DNA of 63,152 nucleotides, the filler included, from Platydemus manokwari (lineage: Eukaryota), in the NCBI GenBank assembly GCA_037951405.1. It is 6 parts of 6 records of this genome, joined end to end, with 100 filler letters (N's around TTAATTAATTAA, not from the genome) between each part and the next. Parts side by side here need not be neighbours in the genome. Positions count along the whole stretch, not along the records: positions 19,532 to 32,235 come from JBBMOY010008904.1; 5 more parts are not named here. One strand, 5' to 3'. The notes under the pieces are model-generated. The model saw only the letters and a list, made by a program, of their open reading frames with translations, was not told where the DNA came from and did not search any database. Within the stretch, counting starts at the first letter, position 1, and each line of letters begins with the position of its first letter. Positions 19,532-32,235 of the stretch are shown here, piece after piece. Made by a program: the position numbers and the translations under genes.

Positions 19532-20246
19532 TGATATTACAATACATTCCAATGATTATTGAAAATCAGATTGTTTTTTTGCAAAATTAAGTGATCTTGA
19601 ATCTCTAAGCTATTTGTGATAAATCTGATAAAACAGAGTTTTTGAATGTGATTAAGTTAAAATAAATTATATTTTTATTAATAGTCTTATCATTTAAATA
19701 TTCATTGTTTAGAAAAATCGTATTAATATATTAATTCTTTTGCAATGCTGATTATCTTTAAATTTGTGGTAATATTTCAGATTATAATATATATTCCAAA
19801 ATATCTTAAAAAATTTTCTACTCTTTTTTCAAACATTATAGATTCGATAAACTTGTAAATATTATAAATTTGGATAACAGTAAAAAATATTGGGGAAAAA
19901 TAACCACGTGCGGTTCGACCGTTCCTGCATTTATAATATACATCTTTCGTCTATAATATATATTTTCATTTTATCTATTATATTTTAGTTATAATTACAC
20001 AATGAACTGGTAATAAATATGGGTTTAATTTTGACTATAAATTATTTTTGTTATCTTTAGTTCCTGATTATATTTATGTTGATTTCATATTTTGTGCTTG
20101 GTGATGTATTAATAAATAATAGATTTCTATTGTTATGTTTTTGTCTTTCCAAATGACGATATCACATTGTTTGGAATCCAGAAATCGTAGTGTTTATTAT
20201 TGTTAATAATTGTCGTCATCAGCCATGTATTTTGTTATAGAATGAT

Positions 20247-20549
20247 ATGAAGAAACATGAAGTATCTGGAGAAAGTTATTATACCAGTGTCAGTGACAAT
20301 TGTGATAAATATAAACGTCATTATAATACTTGCTTTTCCAATTTCCTTCAGCAATTTAGACACGGGAAAGAAATTGATCCATGTAAAGATAAGTTACGAA
20401 CATATATGAAGTATGAATTGTTATCGAATTTCACAACTCTCTGAAATCGTATTAGATGTTTACAAGTTGATCTAAAGCGACTTGGACTAACAATTAAGAA
20501 TCTGGATGAATCTGGAAATCCAATTATTGAAGATTTTACGAAGAAATAA
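20247..20549 (+). CDS. TRIAP1: TRIAP1/MDM35-like twin CX9C mitochondrial intermembrane-space protein; exons 20247-20410 and 20456-20549
   Basis: Removing a 45-bp GT-AG intron gives SVSDN-CDKYKRHYNTC-FSNFLQQFRHGKEIDP-CKDKLRTYMKC-LQVDLKRLGL. It has two CX9C motifs and follows the TRIAP1 pattern SVxxxCxxxKRxYxxCF...F..G...DPC...Y..C. Confidence 0.85.
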
Positions 20550-20715
20550 AACGTTTCATTCAATTAATGTGTTTTCCAATAAACTTAAATATAGGATTTC
20601 ATATTGTTTCTTTTCACATTCTGTATATGGGAATTTTGTTTAATAAATAATGTCTGTTTTGAATGTGTGTGGAATTTTGTTACACGGTTATTAAAATGTG
20701 ATTTTTAGGTGTCCG

Positions 20716-23700
20716 ATGATCAATCAAATAATTACCTATCTTCTCGACAAGATCATTGGGAAATATGTTGAGAACTTCACAACACTCAATGTTAAAACTG
20801 GAATATTAAAGGGTTTGAATTTATTTGTGAAGGTGTTAATGTTACTGCTGAATGATGATTTAACAGGAGATGTACGATTGGAAAATTTACCTTTGAAGAA
20901 AAGCGTTCTGCAAGACTTATTCGAATGGCCTATAATCATCAAAACAGGTAATTGTTAAATGAGATTTTTTCGAACAATTTTTTTGGTAAATAATGACATT
21001 TTAATAATTTATTTATTGATAAAATATTTTATTATGATAAAGAAAATTATTTGAATCTGTAATATTTGAAAAATACGCAAATGGGAAATTAAATAAAATA
21101 TTTTTTTTCAAAAATTAATTTTTAAAAATATAACTTTATATAATTATTAATTATTATTAAATTAAACATTATATAATAACGATTTTTATTTTAATTATTG
21201 GTTGTTCTGTTATTATTAAACTGTAATGTTTAAAAGGGTTTCTTGGTAGAATCAATTGGTAGTCCATTAATATATCGGTTTCGTACTCCTTTCGATTCAT
21301 TAAATTGCATACGGCACCGAATCCATCATTTAATAACTCGTTCATTAATATATTTAATCCACCGATCGTTTCATTTCCAGTTGGCACCAATGGCTATTGT
21401 CACTTAATATATGTACATTTTGGTTATTATTGGTAATAATAATAATTATTATTTTACATTATAAACATCAAAAGACTAAAGATTTTATTTTTTTTAATAT
21501 AACAAAGTGGATATTGGATTTAGCGGTATATTTTTTTGGCCTTTATAGAATAATATCATGAACAAGAATTTAAAAAAATATATTTTTTATTTTCCAAATT
21601 AATATCAAGTAAATTTTATTAATCTAGTATTTCTTATCTAACACGGAAAAGTATTTTATTAATTATCTGATTTTTTTTTCAATATTTATACTGATCAGGT
21701 CATGGTTTCCCAAAATTGAGCCCTGGTATACGGTGAATGGTTCAATTAACATTTGAAGTGCTTTGATATATTATTATTATTATTAGAAAATATTGTAATA
21801 AAATTTTGTATGTCAATTGCTCTCTTATTAACGACAATTGAGTTCAGTAAATCTATTATCCAGTTTTATTATACGATTTATTTAATCAATTGTTGTTTTC
21901 TGATGACTGATGATGATTGTTATAGAATTGAATGATTTGTTTACACGACAACTTTATTATTACTTTATAGTTCATTGTGTATTCTCGTAGGATTGATAAT
22001 ATTATGGAATAATATTATTATCATGAACTTATATTATATCTTGATTAATATTTTTAATCTTTGGTTTTTGGATTTGTAGGGCTTATTGGGCGAGTTACAT
22101 TGCGCATTCCTTACACTCGCTTTCGTAGTCAAGCATGGGCGATCATGATTGAAGATATTTATATTGTTGCCGAACCAAGCGGTAACTGGAATTGTTCAGC
22201 AACCGAATTTCAAAATGAAAATATGATGAAAAAAATATTTTTGGATTCATTAGAGGCCAAATGGCGAAAAGTAGTATTTGTAGTGAATTAAAAAAAATAG
22301 ATTTAAAACCAAATAGAAAATTAAACTTGAAGTAGATAATGGGAAATCTGAATCGAAAATCTGGCTTTCATATGTTGCATCACTCGGTTATCGAGTATTG
22401 CGCAATATACAAATAGAAGTTCGAAACGTACATGTCAGATATGAAGACAATTTGACTATTCCATCACAGTTATTCTCTACAGGGTTGATTATTGACGAAT
22501 TTTCGACGAAAAGTTCTGATTTTGATTGGGTACTACGATTTTAGCTTTTTATAAGAGATGAAATATTAATTTTAACATAAAAATTTGGAATATTTGTTTA
22601 ATTTACTAAATCACCAATATAGATCATGAGATGAGTTATAACCAAAATGTTTAATTATTTGTATAATTATATTCTAACGATGTGAATTTAATTATTAATA
22701 ATAGAAAAAGAAGAGTTATTATTATCCATATCAATACATATGTATGTGAATACATTTAAGCGGTGGGACATACAAACCTATGACATTTGCATCGAAGCAC
22801 AATACAAATCTCTTCTGAATCGTGTTCCCATTTTATTATTAAGCGATTTACACCGTTTTACTATCTAGCCACGCTTGATGTCAGTTGCAGTTAATCGTTT
22901 ATTGTAGAAAATGTTAATATGCAAGTGATAGGATTTTATCCATTGTGAAATGATGTTCTGCTTAAGTAAACTAACTATTCGAGTTCATGCCGGTTACACA
23001 TTAATAATCTAATAGTTTACCATGTTGAATGAATCACATAAATATTAACATGGCCTCGTTGATTACTAATTCTGTCACATTCCCATAGATCATGATTGCA
23101 CAAATTTTTCCCCTAAAAAAAATCTGGTGTAATCATGGTATGTAATTAGTTAAAGATTATTATCAATAGTGCCTGTACAATCCGATGTTGATTTCAATAT
23201 TCAATATCATATTCATATGTAATTTATCTTAATTAATAAATTAAATGATTAAATTCGTTCTGATGATCTTTTCAATTAACTCTTCCCACACTTTGGTTTT
23301 TTAATTTAAATATTAAATTTATAACTATTTTCTATGCTACTTGTACAAGATGGAACAGATATTAAAGTTTTTATCGATTGAATTTAAGAAAGATGTATTT
23401 ATATTTCGGCGTTTAAAAATGGTTCCATGTTATGAGTTGTTTTCAACGAGATGGTTCTGTACTAATCATTCGTTTTTAGAACTTTGTTGAAGTCATTATG
23501 TTTGCAATAAATGCCAGTCATTAATCATCACAATGTCACTGGAGTTTTTTTTATTCACCGCAGTGTTTACCATTAATATATTTGATACCTCAGATTCTGA
23601 GATTCTATTTGGATAACTATAATATAAAATTATTTACTGATATATTCAATTCTATGATTATTTCGTGGATAAAATATATTTTGTATTGATTTCATTGAAA

Positions 23701-26700
23701 AATAGGTTTTGGGACATTTTTTTTCAAATCTAGAACTATTATTTGAAATGTGAAAATAAAGTGTCTTTTTCAACAAATGTTCTTAAAGGATTCATTAAAA
23801 ATGCCTATAATAACATCAGCACATTTGTCAAAACCTATCGTATATTTCTAATAAGAAATCTAATTCATTATTTAAATTACGGAATATCAGGAGTCCCGTG
23901 GTGAATTAAAGCCCGATCTTGATGTAGTCAACAAACAAGTGGATCTTAGCGGAGTTAGTATTTATTTGGATTCAAATTGCCAAACGCCATGTCATGACAT
24001 CAGTATTGAAAACGTCAAATCAATCCTTCAACAGAGAGTAATCCATAGTAAATATATCAACTATTCATTTAACACCAAATGTTCAGGCGAAAGATATGCC
24101 TGAGTCTGATTATATTGTGAAACCAATATCTTTGCAAGGTATCATGAAAAGATATATCAATCCTTTCCCAATGAACATACAACCCCGTATCTCTTTACAT
24201 TTACAAATGAAATTGGTTGAAGTTAGTTTGTCGCAAGCACAATATAAAACTGCAGTGGCTCTCAATGATGAAATAGAAAGATTTGATCGCCAAAAACATC
24301 ATATGAAATATCGACCTGAATTATCTGTGAAAGATGCGTGAGTATAATAATAATAATAATTATTATGTTTTCTGCTATCAATTCATGTCACAACAGGTTA
24401 TTAAACCCCATCAATCAATCAATAACTAAACTAATTATGTGAATTTTCTTCGAAATTATTCAACATTTTTAAATGTTCTCATTATTGATATTTATTATAA
24501 ATAACATCTGAAATTATTTTCATTCTCAAATCCACTGTACTGAAACATTTATTGCTGTGAAATGACGATATTGGTCTCTTTTGTCTTCTCTATTGTGTCG
24601 AAATAGATACAATTTTGTTTGGATCTCATTTATCACAAGTTTATGACAATGATATTTGCAATTCAGTTGATGATTTTTGATGAAAAAATATAATTTATCA
24701 AAATTATCGTATAATATCATTCTATGAAATGTGTTATAATCAATAATTTTATACATAGATTCCTTCAATTATTTATTATTATAATTTAATTTATCAAATG
24801 ATTTCTCACAAATCCCTTTGGCGTAAAATTTCAAATAGATTGAGATATTTGAAGCTTTTGATTAAATAAAATTCTATAAAATTTGTTGTAAAATAATTAA
24901 ATAAATTATTACAACTGGTACTGGTTTTTTAAATTAAACAAAAAAAATAATTTACTCTCAACATTAAATAATAAGATTAATAGTTTGAAAATAATGTTTT
25001 GTCTCTATTGAATTGATTTGAGTGTAATTGAATGAATACTGTCAATTAAGCGTGGTAGAGATGGTAACACAATCAATTGTTCACACCTCCATGAATGTGA
25101 TGTGGTGAGATTATTTTTAGAATTAATCGTTTTAGAAGAATAAGCATTATAATTTTCATTTGTTCAATAGAAATCTCATTACTTATCTAACATAGTGATC
25201 AAGTTAAATGAATAAATACAACTAAATTTGAAATTAATTTTCCAATTTTTGTTATTTCATAAATGAATTATGTCTACAATTTAAGAAATTCCATTTTTTT
25301 AATCAAAATTTTTTACGAAAAAACCTGTGAATTTTACCTTGTTGACGACAGTATGGTGCGTGATAAATTTTTAATTCGTATCAGAAACACCATAACGATT
25401 TTGAGGCGCAAAAATTTACGTTTGGGATTTAATGTCCAACAATTTAATTATGTGTATGACGTCAGTTGTTCGACAATGAAACATCAAATAATATAACAAA
25501 AATGATAATTATTAAAGCCCCAGGAAAAATTTAATCATTATTAAATATAAATACATTTCAGACCAAGGGAATGGTGGAAATTTGCTATTACTGAACATAT
25601 ACGGGATATATGTAAGGGTACAGCGTTGAGAGAACGTATGCGAAATCTTGTGAAATACGTCCAATCATATGAAGACTATTTATTAAACAAAGATAATTCT
25701 GATGAGCTGAATTTTCGTAATCAATTAGAATCTGAACTGGAATTGGAAAGTTTGGTACATTTGCGAGAAGTTGCCATGGAACGAGTAAGTCGTAAAAGTC
25801 GAGAATTAATACAGGTAGTAAAAATAGTTGCTCTAATATTACTTACAATGAAATAGAATGCAATTCGAAGTCAAGCTTCTCAGCAAAGTAGTTGGTGGAA
25901 TTATTTATGGGGTCGCAAAAATAAGGAAATTACAGTTGAAACAATGAATCAAGAGTCACTTAGTGAAACATCTCAAATTATTGAGAAATTACTTCCTGAA
26001 GAATGCACATATCACGTTTTGGAGCAAGATATATCAGAAATGCTCAATGAAGTAAGGAATGTATAATGATTATAAAAATATTGATAAAAATAATAAATTA
26101 AATCAGAATAAATTATATTAAATTAAAAAAATATTCACATATTTTAATGAATAATCAACTTGTTGATATCTTAACCTAGTAACTTCGTTACATAGGTTTA
26201 TATAGAACAGTGGTTCTCAACCCCCCGGGGCCGACAAGCATTTTTAAAGGGGTCCCCGAATTATGGTAGATGTACAAACCATTACATATTGTAAAATAAC
26301 TAGTTTGTGATGCTGATTAAGCTACTTATGTTCACAATTACCTTGACTACTACATTTAAGTATTTTATAGGTAATGCTATTATCTGATAATCTTATTATT
26401 ATAGGAAATTCATCACTTGTTGTAAATTGGTTTTATTAAATATGGTGAATTACAAATTATTTTTAATAATATTGGGTTCGCCAAGACCTTAAAAATGGGA
26501 AAATGAATCACCATAGAAAAGGTTGAGAACCGCTGATTTAGAACATCAAATTATCATTAACTTAATCCATGTTTTATTTTAATAATTAAATCGATATAAA
26601 CAGTAAATTAATTAATAAATAACACTCGTTTCATTAATTTCAAAAGAAAAAATGTGATCACATGGTATCTCTTATATATTTTTCGTTTCAATTTAAGAGT

Positions 26701-29700
26701 CTCATGACTTAGTTTTTGTACAGCTTTGTTTGCATAACTTGAACATATATTTTGATTATTTTTAGTCGATTGCCATTTGTTTTTCAGCACAAACTTTTGT
26801 TTTCCATTATATTTTAATCAAATTGCATTTTTTGATATAATATCAAGCTTCTAAATTTTTTATATATTCACATTGCTCGATAAAATCTCCATCAGCACCT
26901 ATTCTTGGTGAATATATTTCTAAGTGTGTTTTGAAGATTCACTAATTGATTGATAATTCCAATAGCTATTCCACCGCCCTACTAGGATGGTAGTCTTGGA
27001 GATAGGACATTCAATCTACCATTTAATAATTTATTCATTTGTAAATTTGGATCTGTTTTAATTTTGGACATCTATATTAGCTTTTCCCTGACAGAAATTC
27101 GAATCTTTCGACAAAAATCCATTTGATTTCATTAATACAATTTGATTTCTTGAATACACTACATTTTCATGAACTAACACAAATCTTAAAAGATTTGGAA
27201 ATTTTAAGCTATAAACCTGGTGAGTATTATTTTGGTGTCGGATTTTATTTTCTGGATCATTAACTTCTTATTTTTAATTTTCAAGTCTTATTTCTGTAAA
27301 TGATATCATAGTGCTAATAATTTTGGGAACATAACCTGTGGCAGTATTATATTCTTTTTGTGTCGCTAAGAAAAATTAAACAAGAATATCTTTATAAAAT
27401 CATATTTTCCATAATAATTAAAATATAATATTCATTTTTTAGATCACATTTCGTTGTAATTTCATAAGCCATGGTTTTATTGTTTCCTTTCAAGCTCTGG
27501 AAATATTATCGTGAAAGATTTATTTTTATTTCGAACTTGAATCTTCCGTTTTGTAGAATCTTTATTTTATTTATGACTAACAATATAGGATATCATGATT
27601 TTCATTTTTAATAAATATCAAAATGAAACTTTTGAAATCACAGCTGTGTCAATCGTTTGATCTTCGTGTCATATTGTATATTTCTGAGTTGCAGCAGCTG
27701 CTATGTTATTTAAATCTGTAAGAGATTACAATATGTGCTCCAATGTTGCTTATTATTTATGAAAGTGTTCTGTAAAAATTGATTATTTTAAAGCACTTCT
27801 CATGCTGATTTAGCATATTTTTCGCATTTGAAATTAGCTCTAATAGAAGTATGTTTTGCGGAAGTAAAACCAAACATTTTTATTTTTAAATGGAATTTAT
27901 TTCGAGGAATTTAATTAGAATGACTTTTAAATTTTGTTGTTTTGATGTCTATAGATTTTAAAATTCCAATTGTTTTTGTACAGCTTTATTGATTATTTCT
28001 ATTAATTAAGTTTTTCTCGGTACAATTACTCCGATTTCTTTTATTTGTCAGTTTTTTTTCATTTATGATTTTGCGAATCTGATTAAAAAGTTTATCTGTT
28101 CATTGATGAATTCAACATTATTTTACTCATCTGTTCTTTCATTTATACTTATTGATATATGTTATCTAATGAGATTATATATTTTTTTAAATTTATAACA
28201 CGTTTCATTTTTTGAAATTTTAATATGATTAACATAATTTAGGTCGATCATGAAGCTGTGAATTTTTTTAGAAGAGATAAAATATTTTTAAGAGGAGAAT
28301 TCTCTTTAGACGGAATCAGATTGAAACTTTTAAAAGATAGAGATATTCCTGTAATGACTTGATACAACAGGAAAATTGATTTGATTTCCATTTAATTTAA
28401 GATTGTCGCAATCAATGCTTCACATTTAAATGTAGGATTTGAATCACGACCTCAATATTCTTCATGGTTCATCAGGGTCGGTTTAAGATCTTTATTTATA
28501 CAAGATCTTGAATGTGATAATGATAAAACTGTTTTTCGCGACGTCGTCACATCTCGGGAACTTTCTCAAAATTCCGAGAAAGAAATATTCGCATTAGCGT
28601 TTGAAAGCAATCCACTTCCAAATATATACCCGTCAAATGTTAAAAGGATGTAAGATTATTTCAAAACGATATGTAAATGTGTGTATGTCTAATATGTTCC
28701 CATAGCTTGGCCATAAGCAGTGAACCGTTGACAATTATTAATTGTCCTACACTGATTGCGAATGTTCATGATTATTTATCCAGTTTGATATCCACAAAAG
28801 ATATTAAAAGTAAACTATTTAATAAAATAATATTATAAAACAAATAACACATTAAGGTGCCGCTGAAAAGCACTTCATGAATGCAAAAGCTCGCACAAGT
28901 GCTTCAATAAGAAATTTGTTAAATAAAGGATCAACAGAAATTCGGTGGTGGATTTCACTGAACATCAGTGCCCCTAAATTAATTTTACCCAATTGTCTTC
29001 AATTGCAAAACGATAATCCAAGTTGTGTATTGGTCGATTTAGGTCGATTACATGTTTCCAACTGTCCACATAACCAAATTGATTCTCTGTTGAAAATACA
29101 AGATTCTGGCCAAATTGGTTATGAATCAGACGTTGATTCCGATGATTTTGTGACTCCAGCTACATCTCTAATGGGATCTTTAGAGGATTTGACAATGGAA
29201 ATTCCCAATCAAGAATCACTGGAAAATCATGAAATTTCAAATATTTATGATGAATACTCAATTACATTGGAAAATATTATGGCTCTAGCTGGTACATGGA
29301 ATGATTTGCAATCAACTCTTTCAAGAAATTCTATAAATAAGAGCAAAGATCTTTTACTAATGGAGCCATTCAATTTACAATTGGATCTCAAACGGAAATG
29401 TGTTATTGACAAATCAGGCGAGTTTCCGAATCTGGTGATGGAATCTACATTGTCCAAATTATTAATCAATATCTCTGATTGTAAACTCATGTTAGCTAAA
29501 GGTTGCTTAGAATCCTTGACATCCTTGATGAATGAATATCCGAAGAAAGGTATAATTTGTCTGTAATGAAATATTATTGTTATCTCAAAATATTATTCAA
29601 TAAAACACTGAAAAAATTATATTTTAATAATGAATAAAATACAATTATTTCGTTGATGGCGCATTTTACAGTAAGTGATAAATCAAAATTGAATGAAAGG

Positions 29701-31234
29701 TCTTTTCTTAAATATGCTTTGTAAATCAAATATCATTTATGATTTTTTATTTTATGTATGAACTTAATTTGACTGGTTAAATTTATCTAGTTATTGTATT
29801 ATGCAGCCAAATGAGGATATTTGATTTCAAAAAGATAATAATCCCATTAATTACCACCATCAATGAATGGTGTTTATTGAATACATTCAATCCAATGGAT
29901 ATCATAAATGAATCGAAAATTTAAAAAATCATAATATTACATTATCTTTTTTATTATCTTTTTAATGATTTAAATAATAATAATCTGTATTTATATATTT
30001 TATTATTATCTTATTGGATTTATCACTCTATAAAATTAATAATAATAACATTAAAATGTCGAACGTATATGGAGCAGTATTATATTTTGAGAAAATCATA
30101 AATAAACTTAATATAACTTTATAGTCGAGATCTGAATCTTTGGAAACATCCTTATTATCCATCCTATAATTGATTTATTTTTAAAAGTAGGGTATAATGT
30201 TTCGGTTACGAATTTTGACTTAATTGGATCTAGCTATGTGGGTTATTTTTAGTACTAATACGTTATAGGAATTTACTCCTAAAATATGCTAAAGCCTCTT
30301 AAGGTAGGTTTTTATACTTTAGTGGCTCATGTATTGCCGCCAAGTAAATGAATGATAAAAAATCCACTAAAGAATTTTGATTTTTGTCCACACATGATTG
30401 TATATTGCTAGAAACATTGTGTTATTTATCTATTTATTTATAGATAAATCTTCGATTAAACAACGAAGAAATGTAAAATGCGAAGAAATTGATCCTTCAA
30501 AACAAGGTTTTAAATATGTTTCAATCACTTTTGTTTTGCATTCTTTCATTGTACAATTGGAATCCCGTGGTCTTCCACTCGCTGAGTTATCACTAACAGA
30601 AGCTAAATTCGAATTATCTCGATATCCATATACAACATTAATCAACATTCAATTATTAAATCTGGTTCTTGCCGATGCTAGAGCTAATTTGGGATCGAAA
30701 TTAGATTTCATTTTAGCTAGTCATAAAGGTGTACGCCTTGATAATAAAAGCTTAAAGAAAAATTCTAATGATCCAATAATTGAATTCTCTTACACAATCA
30801 GTTCCCATCAAAGGTCTGCTACTCCACGACATAAAGCAAAATTAACATTCTCTGATCTTGACGTCATTGCAAATCAAGAAACATTAATAGAATTACTATC
30901 TTTTATGCGTCCAATATTTTCGGATGGTTCCACAATGGAAACAGATTCTAAACCAGACATTTCAAATATTACTAAATATGATTCATTAGATATTACTATC
31001 GTTTGCAAAGTTGTAACCATTTTACTGATCAAGATATCCTCCAATTGTGATTCTGAGAATCGTTTTGCGGAATCTGTTGGGAAAATATTGCTATCTCATA
31101 TGAATCTTCATCTGTGTAAGAACGGTTCATTTCTCTCAACAAATATTCGTGTTAAATCTGTTGATATTGAAGATATAAGTACACCTGATTCTGTACATCG
31201 AAAAATTCTGACACTCATCACTGGACCTAATGAG
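20716..31234 (+). CDS. VPS13D: VPS13D-like bridge lipid-transfer protein, first 1124 codons, 3'-partial at the contig end. Exons: 20716-20812, 20867-20947, 22080-22270, 22317-22529, 23891-24037, 24087-24337, 25562-25814, 25857-26051, 28243-28350, 28402-28649, 28706-28809, 28857-29549, 30444-31234
   Basis: 13 exons sum to 3372 nt in one open frame with GT-AG introns. Chorein N-terminus (LLDKIIGKYVEN...GILKGDVRLENLPLKK...GLIGRVTLRIP), NIQIEVRNVHVRYED, KYRP...PREWWKFA, and VPS13D-type RWWISLNISAPKLILP, SDDFVTP and IANQETLIELLSF. Confidence 0.92.
26208..26535. mobile_element. hAT (Charlie/Buster-type) MITE, 328 bp, in VPS13D intron 8
   Basis: TIRs CAGTGGTTCTCAACC ... GGTTGAGAACCGCTG; 8-bp TSD atatagaa / atttagaa (7 of 8 match, central TA). 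Confidence 0.9.
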
Positions 31235-32235
31235 GTGATTTAATTTATTTTTTCATTGTCATGAAAATTTTTTTTAATTAAATTGATGTAAAATATAATG
31301 ATTACGATTTTTATCTTCAATACCTATCGTCAGTATAACACAAACTGTGTTAATCCAATATAATCTAATTACCTGATATAAGTTCAAAATGATGGCCTTG
31401 GAAATTGATAATTTTGTTTATTATTTCAAGTTGGTTTATTTTAGTGTTTATATATCTAACATGATTATCAATTCAAACCAGTGGGTGCAAACGATATCAT
31501 GTGAAGCTCTTCATGGCGTTTGGTAATCATTATAAAAACCAAAAATAATTTACATAAGTTTGTCTCTGACAATCTCTTATATTTATTCTTAATATTAACA
31601 CGTTTCATTTTAATCTTGTGATATATTGAAATGAATTTACATTTTAACTTTCATTGTTGTTAAATTGATACCATGTTAAATATGTGTTGCGTCACGATAC
31701 CGATTATAATGGATTAAATAATTTACAAATTAAACCGTATAAATAATAATGCCAAAGTTTATTGATGCCATTATTTACTTCAGGGTTCTACTGATTCCAC
31801 TAGAAAATGTCAGTTTTTCTATTAGAATCTAAACAATGTGGTAGAATTATGAAAAGAAAATTAGTAATTACATGAATAATTAGAATTATTATGCTACTTA
31901 AGATCAAATATATGAAAAAATGACAAAAATGAATCAAATTTATCAACATAGCATGCGATAATTAAAACATTAACATTGAATACTATACATAGTTATACTG
32001 AATAGGGAAACACCAGTCAGATGAACCAGAAGATTAAATTTCGAAAGTATGACTTGAATTTTTTACAATGAATCAATTACTTCAATGAAAGCATTTTAAT
32101 AAAAATCTCAATTTAAGATTCAAAATTTATTAAGACATAATTCACAATTCACAATGAATTAAATTATTATAGATAATTATAATCTCATACCTAACCAATG
32201 ATTCCAAATAAAGTGATTGGAAAACCATTAATGGA

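What the first reader, a model, noticed from the sequence alone, without database searches (positions are those of the whole stretch)
20230..20730. Candidate operon-like, trans-spliced pair of mitochondrial lipid-transfer genes: TRIAP1/MDM35 directly upstream of VPS13D
Seen: same strand, with only 166 bp from the TRIAP1 stop (20549) to the VPS13D ATG (20716) in otherwise gene-sparse DNA. The gap holds AATAAA signals (20545, 20578, 20642), T-rich sequence and an acceptor-like TTTTTAG ending at 20708, 7 nt before the ATG, leaving little room for a promoter plus 5' exon. TRIAP1 also has an acceptor TTTGTTATAG (20240) 6 nt before its ATG. Established: a poly(A) site, a short U-rich gap and an unpaired acceptor form the intercistronic signature of SL trans-spliced operons in nematodes, and flatworms also trans-splice, with leaders ending in AUG (which would be in frame for TRIAP1 here). 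TRIAP1/Mdm35 partners PRELI/Ups proteins in intramitochondrial lipid transfer, and VPS13D bridges lipids at ER-mitochondria contacts. Inference: a co-transcribed lipid-supply unit.
Basis: partly seen in the sequence, partly recalled or inferred. Interest (0 to 1): 0.7.

Follow-up and report, generated by a model that had tools for sequence, protein, structure and literature searches.

The report
Conserved TRIAP1–VPS13 tandem pair, candidate operon
A small mitochondrial lipid-transfer chaperone gene (TRIAP1/Mdm35) sits 166 bases upstream of a VPS13 lipid-bridge gene, and one related species keeps the same order, spacing and splice-acceptor sites, so co-transcription is plausible, but no RNA data were available to test it.

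Summary
A two-exon twin-CX9C TRIAP1/Mdm35 gene (20247-20549) lies 166 nt upstream, on the same strand, of the first exon of a VPS13-family gene (ATG 20716). Three AATAAA lie at or after the TRIAP1 stop. Acceptor-like sites end 6 nt and 7 nt before the two start codons.

In this 27%-GC DNA such acceptor-like sites precede 7-10% of all ATGs, so the window alone proves little.

The new evidence is one relative, a Logan contig with 42% GC whose introns no longer align:
- It has the same gene order and strand, with a 176-nt gap.
- Both acceptors sit at the same positions, with stronger pyrimidine tracts.
- The gap aligns far better than shuffled sequence; intron interiors do not.
- Its TRIAP1 has GTG where the window has ATG. 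A leader ending in AUG would be in frame, but so would a possible upstream cis exon.

Spliced-leader trans-splicing and a shared transcript are therefore untested.

Verdict: real genes and conserved tight linkage; an operon reading is plausible (about 0.45). If true, it is a new member of a known kind. Whether the gene is the VPS13D paralogue was not verified.

The parts
20230..20240 (+). Acceptor-like site (TTTTGTTATAG) ending 6 nt before the TRIAP1 ATG
   Evidence: The relative has an AG at the same aligned position, with 10 of 12 pyrimidines upstream.
20247..20410 (+). TRIAP1/Mdm35 exon 1 (54 codons plus 2 nt). It holds the first Cx9C and the first Cys of the second.
   Evidence: Pfam UPF0203 at 26.5 bits. 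Human TRIAP1 structures 6i3y and 6i3v are the best solved hits. 50% identical to the relative's exon.
20411..20455 (+). TRIAP1 intron, 45 nt (GTATGA...TTAG), phase 2
   Evidence: The relative has an intron of the same length and position (L002:439-483).
20456..20549 (+). TRIAP1 exon 2. It completes the second Cx9C; stop TAA at 20547-20549.
   Evidence: Translation; homologous exon in the relative.
20545..20647 (+). Zone of 3'-end signals: AATAAA at 20545, 20578 and 20642; conserved TTAAATATA (containing AATATA) at 20585-20593
   Evidence: Only the AATATA block is shared with the relative.
20627..20644 (+). Conserved GU/U-rich block ATGGGAAYTTTGTTTAAT, 17 of 18 identical to the relative, at nearly the same distance from the VPS13 ATG (window starts 89 and 81 nt upstream, relative 91 and 83 nt)
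   Evidence: Its function is inferred only: a downstream or intercistronic element, or a promoter element.
20699..20708 (+). Acceptor-like site (TGATTTTTAG) ending 7 nt before the VPS13 ATG
   Evidence: AG|GTG is conserved in the relative, with 9 of 12 pyrimidines upstream.
20716..20812 (+). VPS13 exon 1 (start of the Chorein/VPS13_N region)
   Evidence: VPS13_N profile positions 1-32. 88% amino-acid identity to the relative.
20867..20947 (+). VPS13 exon 2, after the 54-nt intron 20813-20866
   Evidence: VPS13_N profile positions 34-57. 75% nucleotide identity to the relative.
22080..22270 (+). VPS13 exon 3, after the 1132-nt intron 2. The donor is at 22271 or 22274.
   Evidence: VPS13_N profile positions 58-122; junction read.
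22317..32235 (+). Further VPS13 exons up to the edge of the piece, for example ORFs at 22317-22541, 24096-24341 and 28877-29566. The gene is cut off by the edge.
   Evidence: Collinear VPS13_N hits. 6cbc at E 2e-11. The relative's exon is 71% identical.

Best explanation
The pair is a conserved two-gene transcription unit.

Proposed mechanism:
- Transcription starts upstream of TRIAP1, in a conserved 5' region about 140 nt or more before its acceptor.
- TRIAP1 mRNA is cleaved and polyadenylated inside the gap, probably after the conserved AATATA at 20587-20592 or the nearby AATAAA sites.
- The VPS13 mRNA gets its 5' end by splicing at the conserved acceptor at 20708. The most likely route is addition of a spliced leader to a read-through precursor, i.e. 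an operon with an intercistronic spacer.

Shown:
- Both genes are real.
- The short gap is conserved.
- Both acceptor positions are conserved.
- The gap is under constraint.

Inferred:
- That the acceptors are used.
- That the precursor is shared.
- That a spliced leader exists in this organism.
For: - The relative's contig L002 carries TRIAP1 and the VPS13 start in the same order and strand, with a 176-nt gap against 166 nt here.
- Intron interiors between the two species align no better than shuffles (z 0.4-1.6). The gap gives z 4.5 (0 of 1000 shuffles reach it), and z 3.4 without the acceptor end. Five collinear blocks lie at nearly equal distances from the VPS13 ATG.
- In the 42%-GC relative, both acceptor tracts are pyrimidine-rich (10 of 12 and 9 of 12). 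Sites of that quality occur 0.5-2 times per kb there. T-to-C changes keep the tracts pyrimidine.
- Both acceptors lie 6-7 nt from the start codon, as is typical of trans-spliced mRNAs (my own knowledge).
- AATAAA is enriched after the TRIAP1 stop.
- After a 3' UTR and poly(A) signal, about 100 nt remain for a promoter, while the genome is not compact: intron 2 is 1132 nt.
- The layout fits published operon criteria: a gap of 300 bp or less, and a median intercistronic spacer of 99 bp in S. mansoni (PMC12582326).
- The relative's TRIAP1 has GTG at the start position and no ATG before the Cx9C domain. A leader ending in AUG would be in frame in both species. Flatworm leaders are known to donate the start codon (PMC9851317, citing Cheng 2006).
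Against: - There is no RNA evidence of any kind.
- The phylum is unknown, so spliced-leader trans-splicing may not exist in this organism.
- Only one relative was found, so one shared ancestry event underlies all the 'conservation'.
- The conserved gap block at 20627-20644 could equally be a promoter element for VPS13.
- TRIAP1 itself probably has a cis 5' intron: an aligned GT lies at 20106 in the window and L002:141 in the relative. That would also give the relative an in-frame upstream ATG, which removes the need for a leader AUG.
- A leader AUG would be out of frame for VPS13.
- In the window alone, the acceptor-like sites are near chance level.
Confidence: 0.45

Rival explanations
1. These are two separately transcribed neighbours. 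VPS13 has its own compact promoter inside the gap, and the conserved block at 20627-20644 is part of it. Its short 5' piece is removed at the 20708 acceptor, either by trans-splicing of a monocistronic outron or by a mini cis intron. The tight linkage persists by inertia or because regulatory elements are shared.
For: - The gap is conserved in blocks that could be transcription-factor sites or a core promoter.
- A similar TTGTTT/GGAAT-containing block lies about 70-80 nt before the TRIAP1 acceptor as well. This hints at one motif in front of each gene.
- Internal promoters are known even within nematode operons (my own knowledge).
Against: - Only about 100 nt remain between the likely TRIAP1 poly(A) signal and the acceptor.
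- No convincing conserved donor lies in the gap. The aligned GT has a poor donor context (GTGTGG in the window, GTGGTG in the relative).
- The gap length is held at 166 versus 176 nt although neutral sequence is saturated.
Confidence: 0.3
2. One promoter serves both genes by alternative cis-splicing. A non-coding 5' exon ending near 20105 is joined either to the TRIAP1 acceptor (20240) or, skipping TRIAP1, to the VPS13 acceptor (20708). This would resemble the shared first exon of the cholinergic VAChT/ChAT locus.
For: - An aligned GT (gat|GTATTA at 20106; tgt|GTGTAA at L002:141) lies 135 and 128 nt before the TRIAP1 acceptor, inside a conserved upstream block with z 4.7.
- Both downstream acceptors are conserved.
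- This model needs no spliced leader.
Against: - The donor contexts are only moderate.
- No RNA evidence exists.
- Flatworm data show that cis use of operon-resolving acceptors is rare (PMC12582326), though that applies only if this organism is a flatworm.
Confidence: 0.15
3. The acceptor-like motifs are not used. Both mRNAs have plain unspliced leaders, and the adjacency carries no co-expression meaning. The relative's TRIAP1 would start at its in-frame upstream ATG (L002:179).
For: - Acceptor-like sites precede 7-10% of ATGs in this AT-rich DNA.
- In L002 the reading frame is open from position 137, with an ATG at 179.
Against: - Pyrimidine-rich AG sites occur at both homologous positions in the 42%-GC relative, where such sites are rare.
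- The 32-residue extension in the relative has no counterpart in the window, where the frame is closed by TAG at 20238-20240.
- The gap is constrained.
Confidence: 0.1

Closest known systems
Spliced-leader-resolved operons with an intercistronic spacer (C. elegans SL2-type; candidate operons of Schistosoma, cestodes and Macrostomum)
   Same: - Two same-strand genes with a gap under 300 bp.
- A poly(A) signal for the upstream gene lies inside the gap.
- A U/GU-rich conserved block is followed by a 3' splice acceptor a few nt before the downstream ATG.
- Most described flatworm operons have two genes (PMC12582326).
   Different: - No leader, no SL RNA gene and no polycistronic RNA were shown here, and the phylum is unknown.
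- The gene pair TRIAP1-VPS13 is not among described operons in the papers searched.
[quoted passage not shown] 2006, as cited in PMC9851317)
   Same: - A leader AUG joined at the TRIAP1 acceptor is in frame in both species.
- The relative has GTG instead of ATG at the start position.
   Different: - An upstream cis exon with an in-frame ATG is an equally available source of the start codon.
- For VPS13 the leader AUG would be out of frame. That is the case for the 72% majority of S. mansoni trans-spliced mRNAs.
Shared-first-exon loci (cholinergic locus VAChT/ChAT, unc-17/cha-1)
   Same: Two functionally linked genes lie on one strand, each with an acceptor just before its ORF, and there is a candidate common 5' exon.
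   Different: - Here the second gene lies downstream of the first rather than the first being nested in an intron of the second.
- No transcript evidence exists.
- This comparison is recalled from my own knowledge.
TRIAP1-PRELID / Mdm35-Ups and VPS13D lipid-transfer systems
   Same: - The TRIAP1 homologue has both Cx9C motifs, and human TRIAP1 is its best solved relative.
- The VPS13 homologue starts with the Chorein/VPS13_N region.
   Different: - Which VPS13 paralogue this is was not established.
- No known physical or genetic coupling of TRIAP1 and VPS13D was found beyond joint mentions in reviews.

Membership tests
TRIAP1/Mdm35 (UPF0203, twin Cx9C) | Two Cx9C motifs | tested here: met
   The first (C-DKYKRHYNT-C) is in exon 1. 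The second (C-KDKLRTYMK-C) spans the 45-nt intron. The same holds in the relative.
TRIAP1/Mdm35 (UPF0203, twin Cx9C) | Pfam PF05254 match above the gathering score | tested here: inconclusive
   Exon 1 alone scores 26.5 bits against a cut-off of 27. The joined protein was not searched, under the exon-by-exon rule.
TRIAP1/Mdm35 (UPF0203, twin Cx9C) | Closest solved structures are TRIAP1 or Mdm35 | tested here: met
   All seven hits are TRIAP1 or Mdm35. The best is 6i3y at E 1.3e-3.
TRIAP1/Mdm35 (UPF0203, twin Cx9C) | Binds a PRELI/Ups lipid-transfer partner in the intermembrane space | not testable with these tools
   This needs an experiment.
VPS13 family | N-terminal Chorein/VPS13_N region starting at residue 1 | tested here: met
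   Seven exon ORFs hit PF12624 collinearly, from profile position 1 to 859. Each is below the 80-bit whole-protein cut-off, but together they sum to about 190 bits. 6cbc matches at E 2e-11.
VPS13D paralogue | Orthology to VPS13D (UBA domain; tree placement among the A/B/C/D paralogues) | not testable with these tools
   The UBA region lies beyond the edge of the piece and no VPS13D reference sequence was available. The N-terminal resemblance (GKYV.N..., LENLPLKK) is recalled from memory only.
Spliced-leader trans-spliced operon | Same-strand genes with a short intercistronic gap (300 bp or less) | tested here: met
   166 nt here and 176 nt in the relative.
Spliced-leader trans-spliced operon | 3'-end signal of the upstream gene inside the gap | tested here: met
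   Three AATAAA are present. AATATA is conserved in both species. This is sequence-level evidence only.
Spliced-leader trans-spliced operon | Functional 3' splice acceptor just upstream of the downstream ORF, with no paired cis donor | tested here: inconclusive
   The acceptor is conserved with a strong pyrimidine tract in the relative. Its use, and the absence of a donor, cannot be shown without RNA.
Spliced-leader trans-spliced operon | Spliced leader on the downstream mRNA; polycistronic precursor | not testable with these tools
Spliced-leader trans-spliced operon | The organism has SL RNA genes | not testable with these tools
   Only this 12.7-kb piece and two short contigs of a relative were available. 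Rfam found nothing in the piece.
Spliced-leader trans-spliced operon | Linkage conserved in relatives | tested here: met
   One relative, Logan SRR33002330, contig L002. No further relatives were recoverable.

The most novel reading that the evidence does not exclude
TRIAP1 and a VPS13D-type lipid bridge form an evolutionarily conserved dicistronic unit that couples two steps of mitochondrial phospholipid supply. In the relative, the spliced leader supplies TRIAP1's only start codon.

A more remote variant concerns the window species alone. There, the TRIAP1 exon-1 donor joined to the VPS13 acceptor reads K-C-P-M in frame. That join completes the second Cx9C and continues into VPS13, which would allow a chimeric isoform. 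In the relative the same join ends in a stop codon.
Probability: 0.2. Interest if true: 0.5.

Novelty: new member of a known kind. Interest (0 to 1): 0.35.

Why it matters
If confirmed, this would be an operon conserved across clearly diverged species. Flatworm operons are reported to be poorly conserved in general (PMC12582326).

It would link two proteins that act at successive steps of lipid delivery to mitochondria, suggesting selection for co-expression. That is a modest, testable hint of functional coupling between VPS13D-type bridges and the TRIAP1-PRELI shuttle.

It does not reveal a new mechanism.

Tried and rejected
**RNA evidence**
- The look-up of sequencing runs found one DNA-like run and no RNA.
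- Those places were kept out of later searches. They were masked or skipped in scripts 42 and 55. sent only the generic hexamer AATAAA as a pattern against the window.

**Earlier findings**

**Search for relatives**
- A word search with TRIAP1 exon 1 found nothing.
- The exhaustive search gave four hits. One is the relative. Two are repeat proteins with no real relation.
- Both metagenome scans failed. The first gave none. The second gave one false positive on an archaeal contig, L003.

**Taxon**
- The Atlas search, cluster look-up and a paper search for the sample accessions gave no organism.

**Other scans**
- Rfam gave only a chance-level hit.
- No tRNA was found.
- Folding of the gap in both species showed nothing unusual, z -0.3 and -1.1.

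**Literature**
- No paper or supplement links TRIAP1 and VPS13 in an operon.

- Joined (spliced) protein models were not searched. Exons were searched one by one by reference.
- A full acceptor weight matrix was abandoned. The confirmed cis acceptors here (ATTAG, AACAG, TGTAG, AATAG) are no richer in pyrimidines than background.
Full report
**What is there**

The piece (19532-32235) has 27% GC, ranging from 21 to 33% in 500-nt windows, and holds no N. Two genes lie on the + strand.

Gene 1 is a TRIAP1/Mdm35 homologue of 85 codons.
- Exon 1 is 20247-20410, the 45-nt intron is 20411-20455, and exon 2 is 20456-20549, ending in TAA.
- Exon 1 alone scores 26.5 bits against Pfam UPF0203, whose cut-off is 27.
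- All seven solved-structure hits are TRIAP1 or Mdm35, with human TRIAP1 best.
- Both Cx9C motifs are present. The second is split by the intron.

Gene 2 is a VPS13-family gene that begins at ATG 20716.
- Seven exon ORFs hit Pfam VPS13_N in collinear order, from profile position 1 to 859.
- One exon matches the Chaetomium Vps13 N-terminal structure 6cbc at E 2e-11.
- The first exons are 20716-20812, 20867-20947, 22080-about 22270, and 22317 onward.
- The gene runs off the edge of the piece.
- Whether it is the D paralogue could not be tested. The resemblance of its N-terminus to human VPS13D is my recollection only.

Every coordinate checks out:
- The gap is 166 nt.
- AATAAA lies at 20545, 20578 and 20642.
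- Acceptor-like sites end at 20240 and 20708.
- The frame statement for an AUG-ending leader is correct for TRIAP1.

Against chance the picture is mixed. Three AATAAA within about 100 nt is an excess over about 2 per kb on this strand. The acceptor-like motifs are weak evidence by themselves, because 7-10% of all ATGs on the + strand of the piece have an equally good site 3-12 nt upstream.

**New comparative evidence**

A word search with the VPS13 start found one protein from a Logan assembly, SRR33002330. Its 1246-nt contig, L002, carries a TRIAP1 homologue and the VPS13 start.
- TRIAP1 exon 1 is 50% identical at the amino-acid level.
- VPS13 exon 1 is 88% identical at the amino-acid level.
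- The order and strand are the same, the intron positions are the same, and the gap is 176 nt.

The relative is clearly diverged.
- Its contigs have 39-42% GC.
- Intron interiors align no better than shuffled sequence, z 0.4-1.6.

Non-coding sequence around the genes is nevertheless conserved.
- The gap aligns with z 4.5; 0 of 1000 shuffles reach that score.
- The 140 nt upstream of the TRIAP1 acceptor align with z 4.7.

Within the gap, five collinear blocks sit at nearly equal distances from the VPS13 ATG:
- TGTGTTTTC.
- TTAAATATA, which contains the poly(A)-signal variant AATATA.
- TTGTTTCT.
- ATGGGAA and TTTGTTTAAT, which form one 18-nt block at 20627-20644 with 17 of 18 identical.

The acceptor AG|GTG lies 7 nt before the ATG in both species.

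Both acceptors in the relative have 9-10 pyrimidines in the 12 nt before the AG. Sites of that quality occur only 0.5-2 times per kb in its contigs. The tracts differ from the window's by T-to-C changes. I take both acceptors to be real and under selection.

**The start codon of the relative's TRIAP1**

The codon aligned with the window's ATG is GTG, and no ATG follows before the Cx9C domain. A leader ending in AUG joined at the acceptor would be in frame in both species. This is the situation described for flatworm leaders: 28% of S. mansoni trans-spliced mRNAs are in frame, and more than 40 need the leader AUG (PMC9851317).

This clue is not decisive, for two reasons:
- A GT aligned in both species (20106 in the window, L002:141) lies 135 and 128 nt before the acceptor. 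Used as a donor, it would supply an in-frame upstream ATG in the relative.
- The unspliced frame of the relative is also open back to an ATG at L002:179.

So TRIAP1 may simply have a cis-spliced 5' exon.

**What could not be done**

- No RNA run holds this locus.
I kept those places out of later searches.
- Further relatives could not be recovered.
- The organism could not be identified. It is therefore unknown whether this lineage trans-splices.
- Spliced protein models were not joined or searched. Exons were searched separately by reference.

**Mechanism**

I think a shared transcription unit is most likely.
- TRIAP1 mRNA would end in the gap.
- VPS13 mRNA would receive its 5' end at the conserved acceptor, probably by a spliced leader.

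The layout runs stop, poly(A) signals, a GU/U-rich conserved block, about 60 nt, acceptor, 7 nt, ATG. This matches spacer-type operons. The median spacer is 99 bp in S. mansoni, and a gap of 300 bp or less is the working criterion in flatworms (PMC12582326).

Little room is left for a separate promoter, in a genome that otherwise tolerates kilobase introns.

I put this reading at about 0.45. The rivals are:
- An own promoter in the gap: 0.3.
- A shared 5' exon with alternative cis-splicing: 0.15.
- Unused motifs: 0.1.

**Novelty and interest**

Spliced-leader operons, and leader-donated start codons, are well known. If confirmed, this would be a new member of that kind.

Two features give it some appeal. 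The tight linkage is conserved across diverged species, and the two products act in successive steps of mitochondrial lipid supply. No paper searched links the two genes in an operon.

A VPS13-family fragment is listed among S. mansoni trans-spliced genes at low read counts. This shows only that such genes can be leader targets in a flatworm.

Noticed in passing
window 19901-19926; L002:96-105: A GC-rich island sits in 21%-GC DNA, about 320 nt before the TRIAP1 ATG. It contains CACGTG, a B-box-like GGTTCGA and short inverted repeats. Its 10-mer GACCGTTCCT recurs upstream of the relative's TRIAP1. It may be a promoter element.
   Followed up: partly
window 20106; L002:141: An aligned GT (gat|GTATTA in the window, tgt|GTGTAA in the relative) lies 135 and 128 nt before the TRIAP1 acceptor. 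It is a candidate cis 5' intron. In the relative it would bring an upstream ATG into frame.
   Followed up: partly
window 20410/20709; L002:438/747: Joining the TRIAP1 exon-1 donor to the VPS13 acceptor reads AA|G TGT CCG ATG, i.e. K-C-P-M. This is in frame with VPS13 and completes the second Cx9C. In the relative the same join reads K-C-stop. Both exons that follow these acceptors begin (A/G)TG(T/C).
   Followed up: no
window 20160-20178 and 20627-20644: Blocks conserved with the relative lie about 70-80 nt before each of the two acceptors, and both contain TTGTTT and GGAA(T). This could be one motif in front of each gene, or coincidence in T-rich DNA.
   Followed up: no
window 21169-21390 (- strand), inside VPS13 intron 2: A 73-codon ORF lies in a GC-richer patch (about 21230-21400) of the 1.1-kb intron. 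It has no Pfam match.
   Followed up: partly
Nothing was laid, and the places were kept out of later searches.
   Followed up: no
L002:92-625 (protein P0003): The collection's gene call on the relative's contig reads through TGA as W, fusing the upstream region, both TRIAP1 exons and the intron into one 177-residue product. This is an artefact of the caller, not a real protein.
   Followed up: yes
window 22693-22727: A weak Rfam match to Corona_pk3 (23.5 bits against a gathering score of 35.6; E 0.42). I take it as chance.
   Followed up: no
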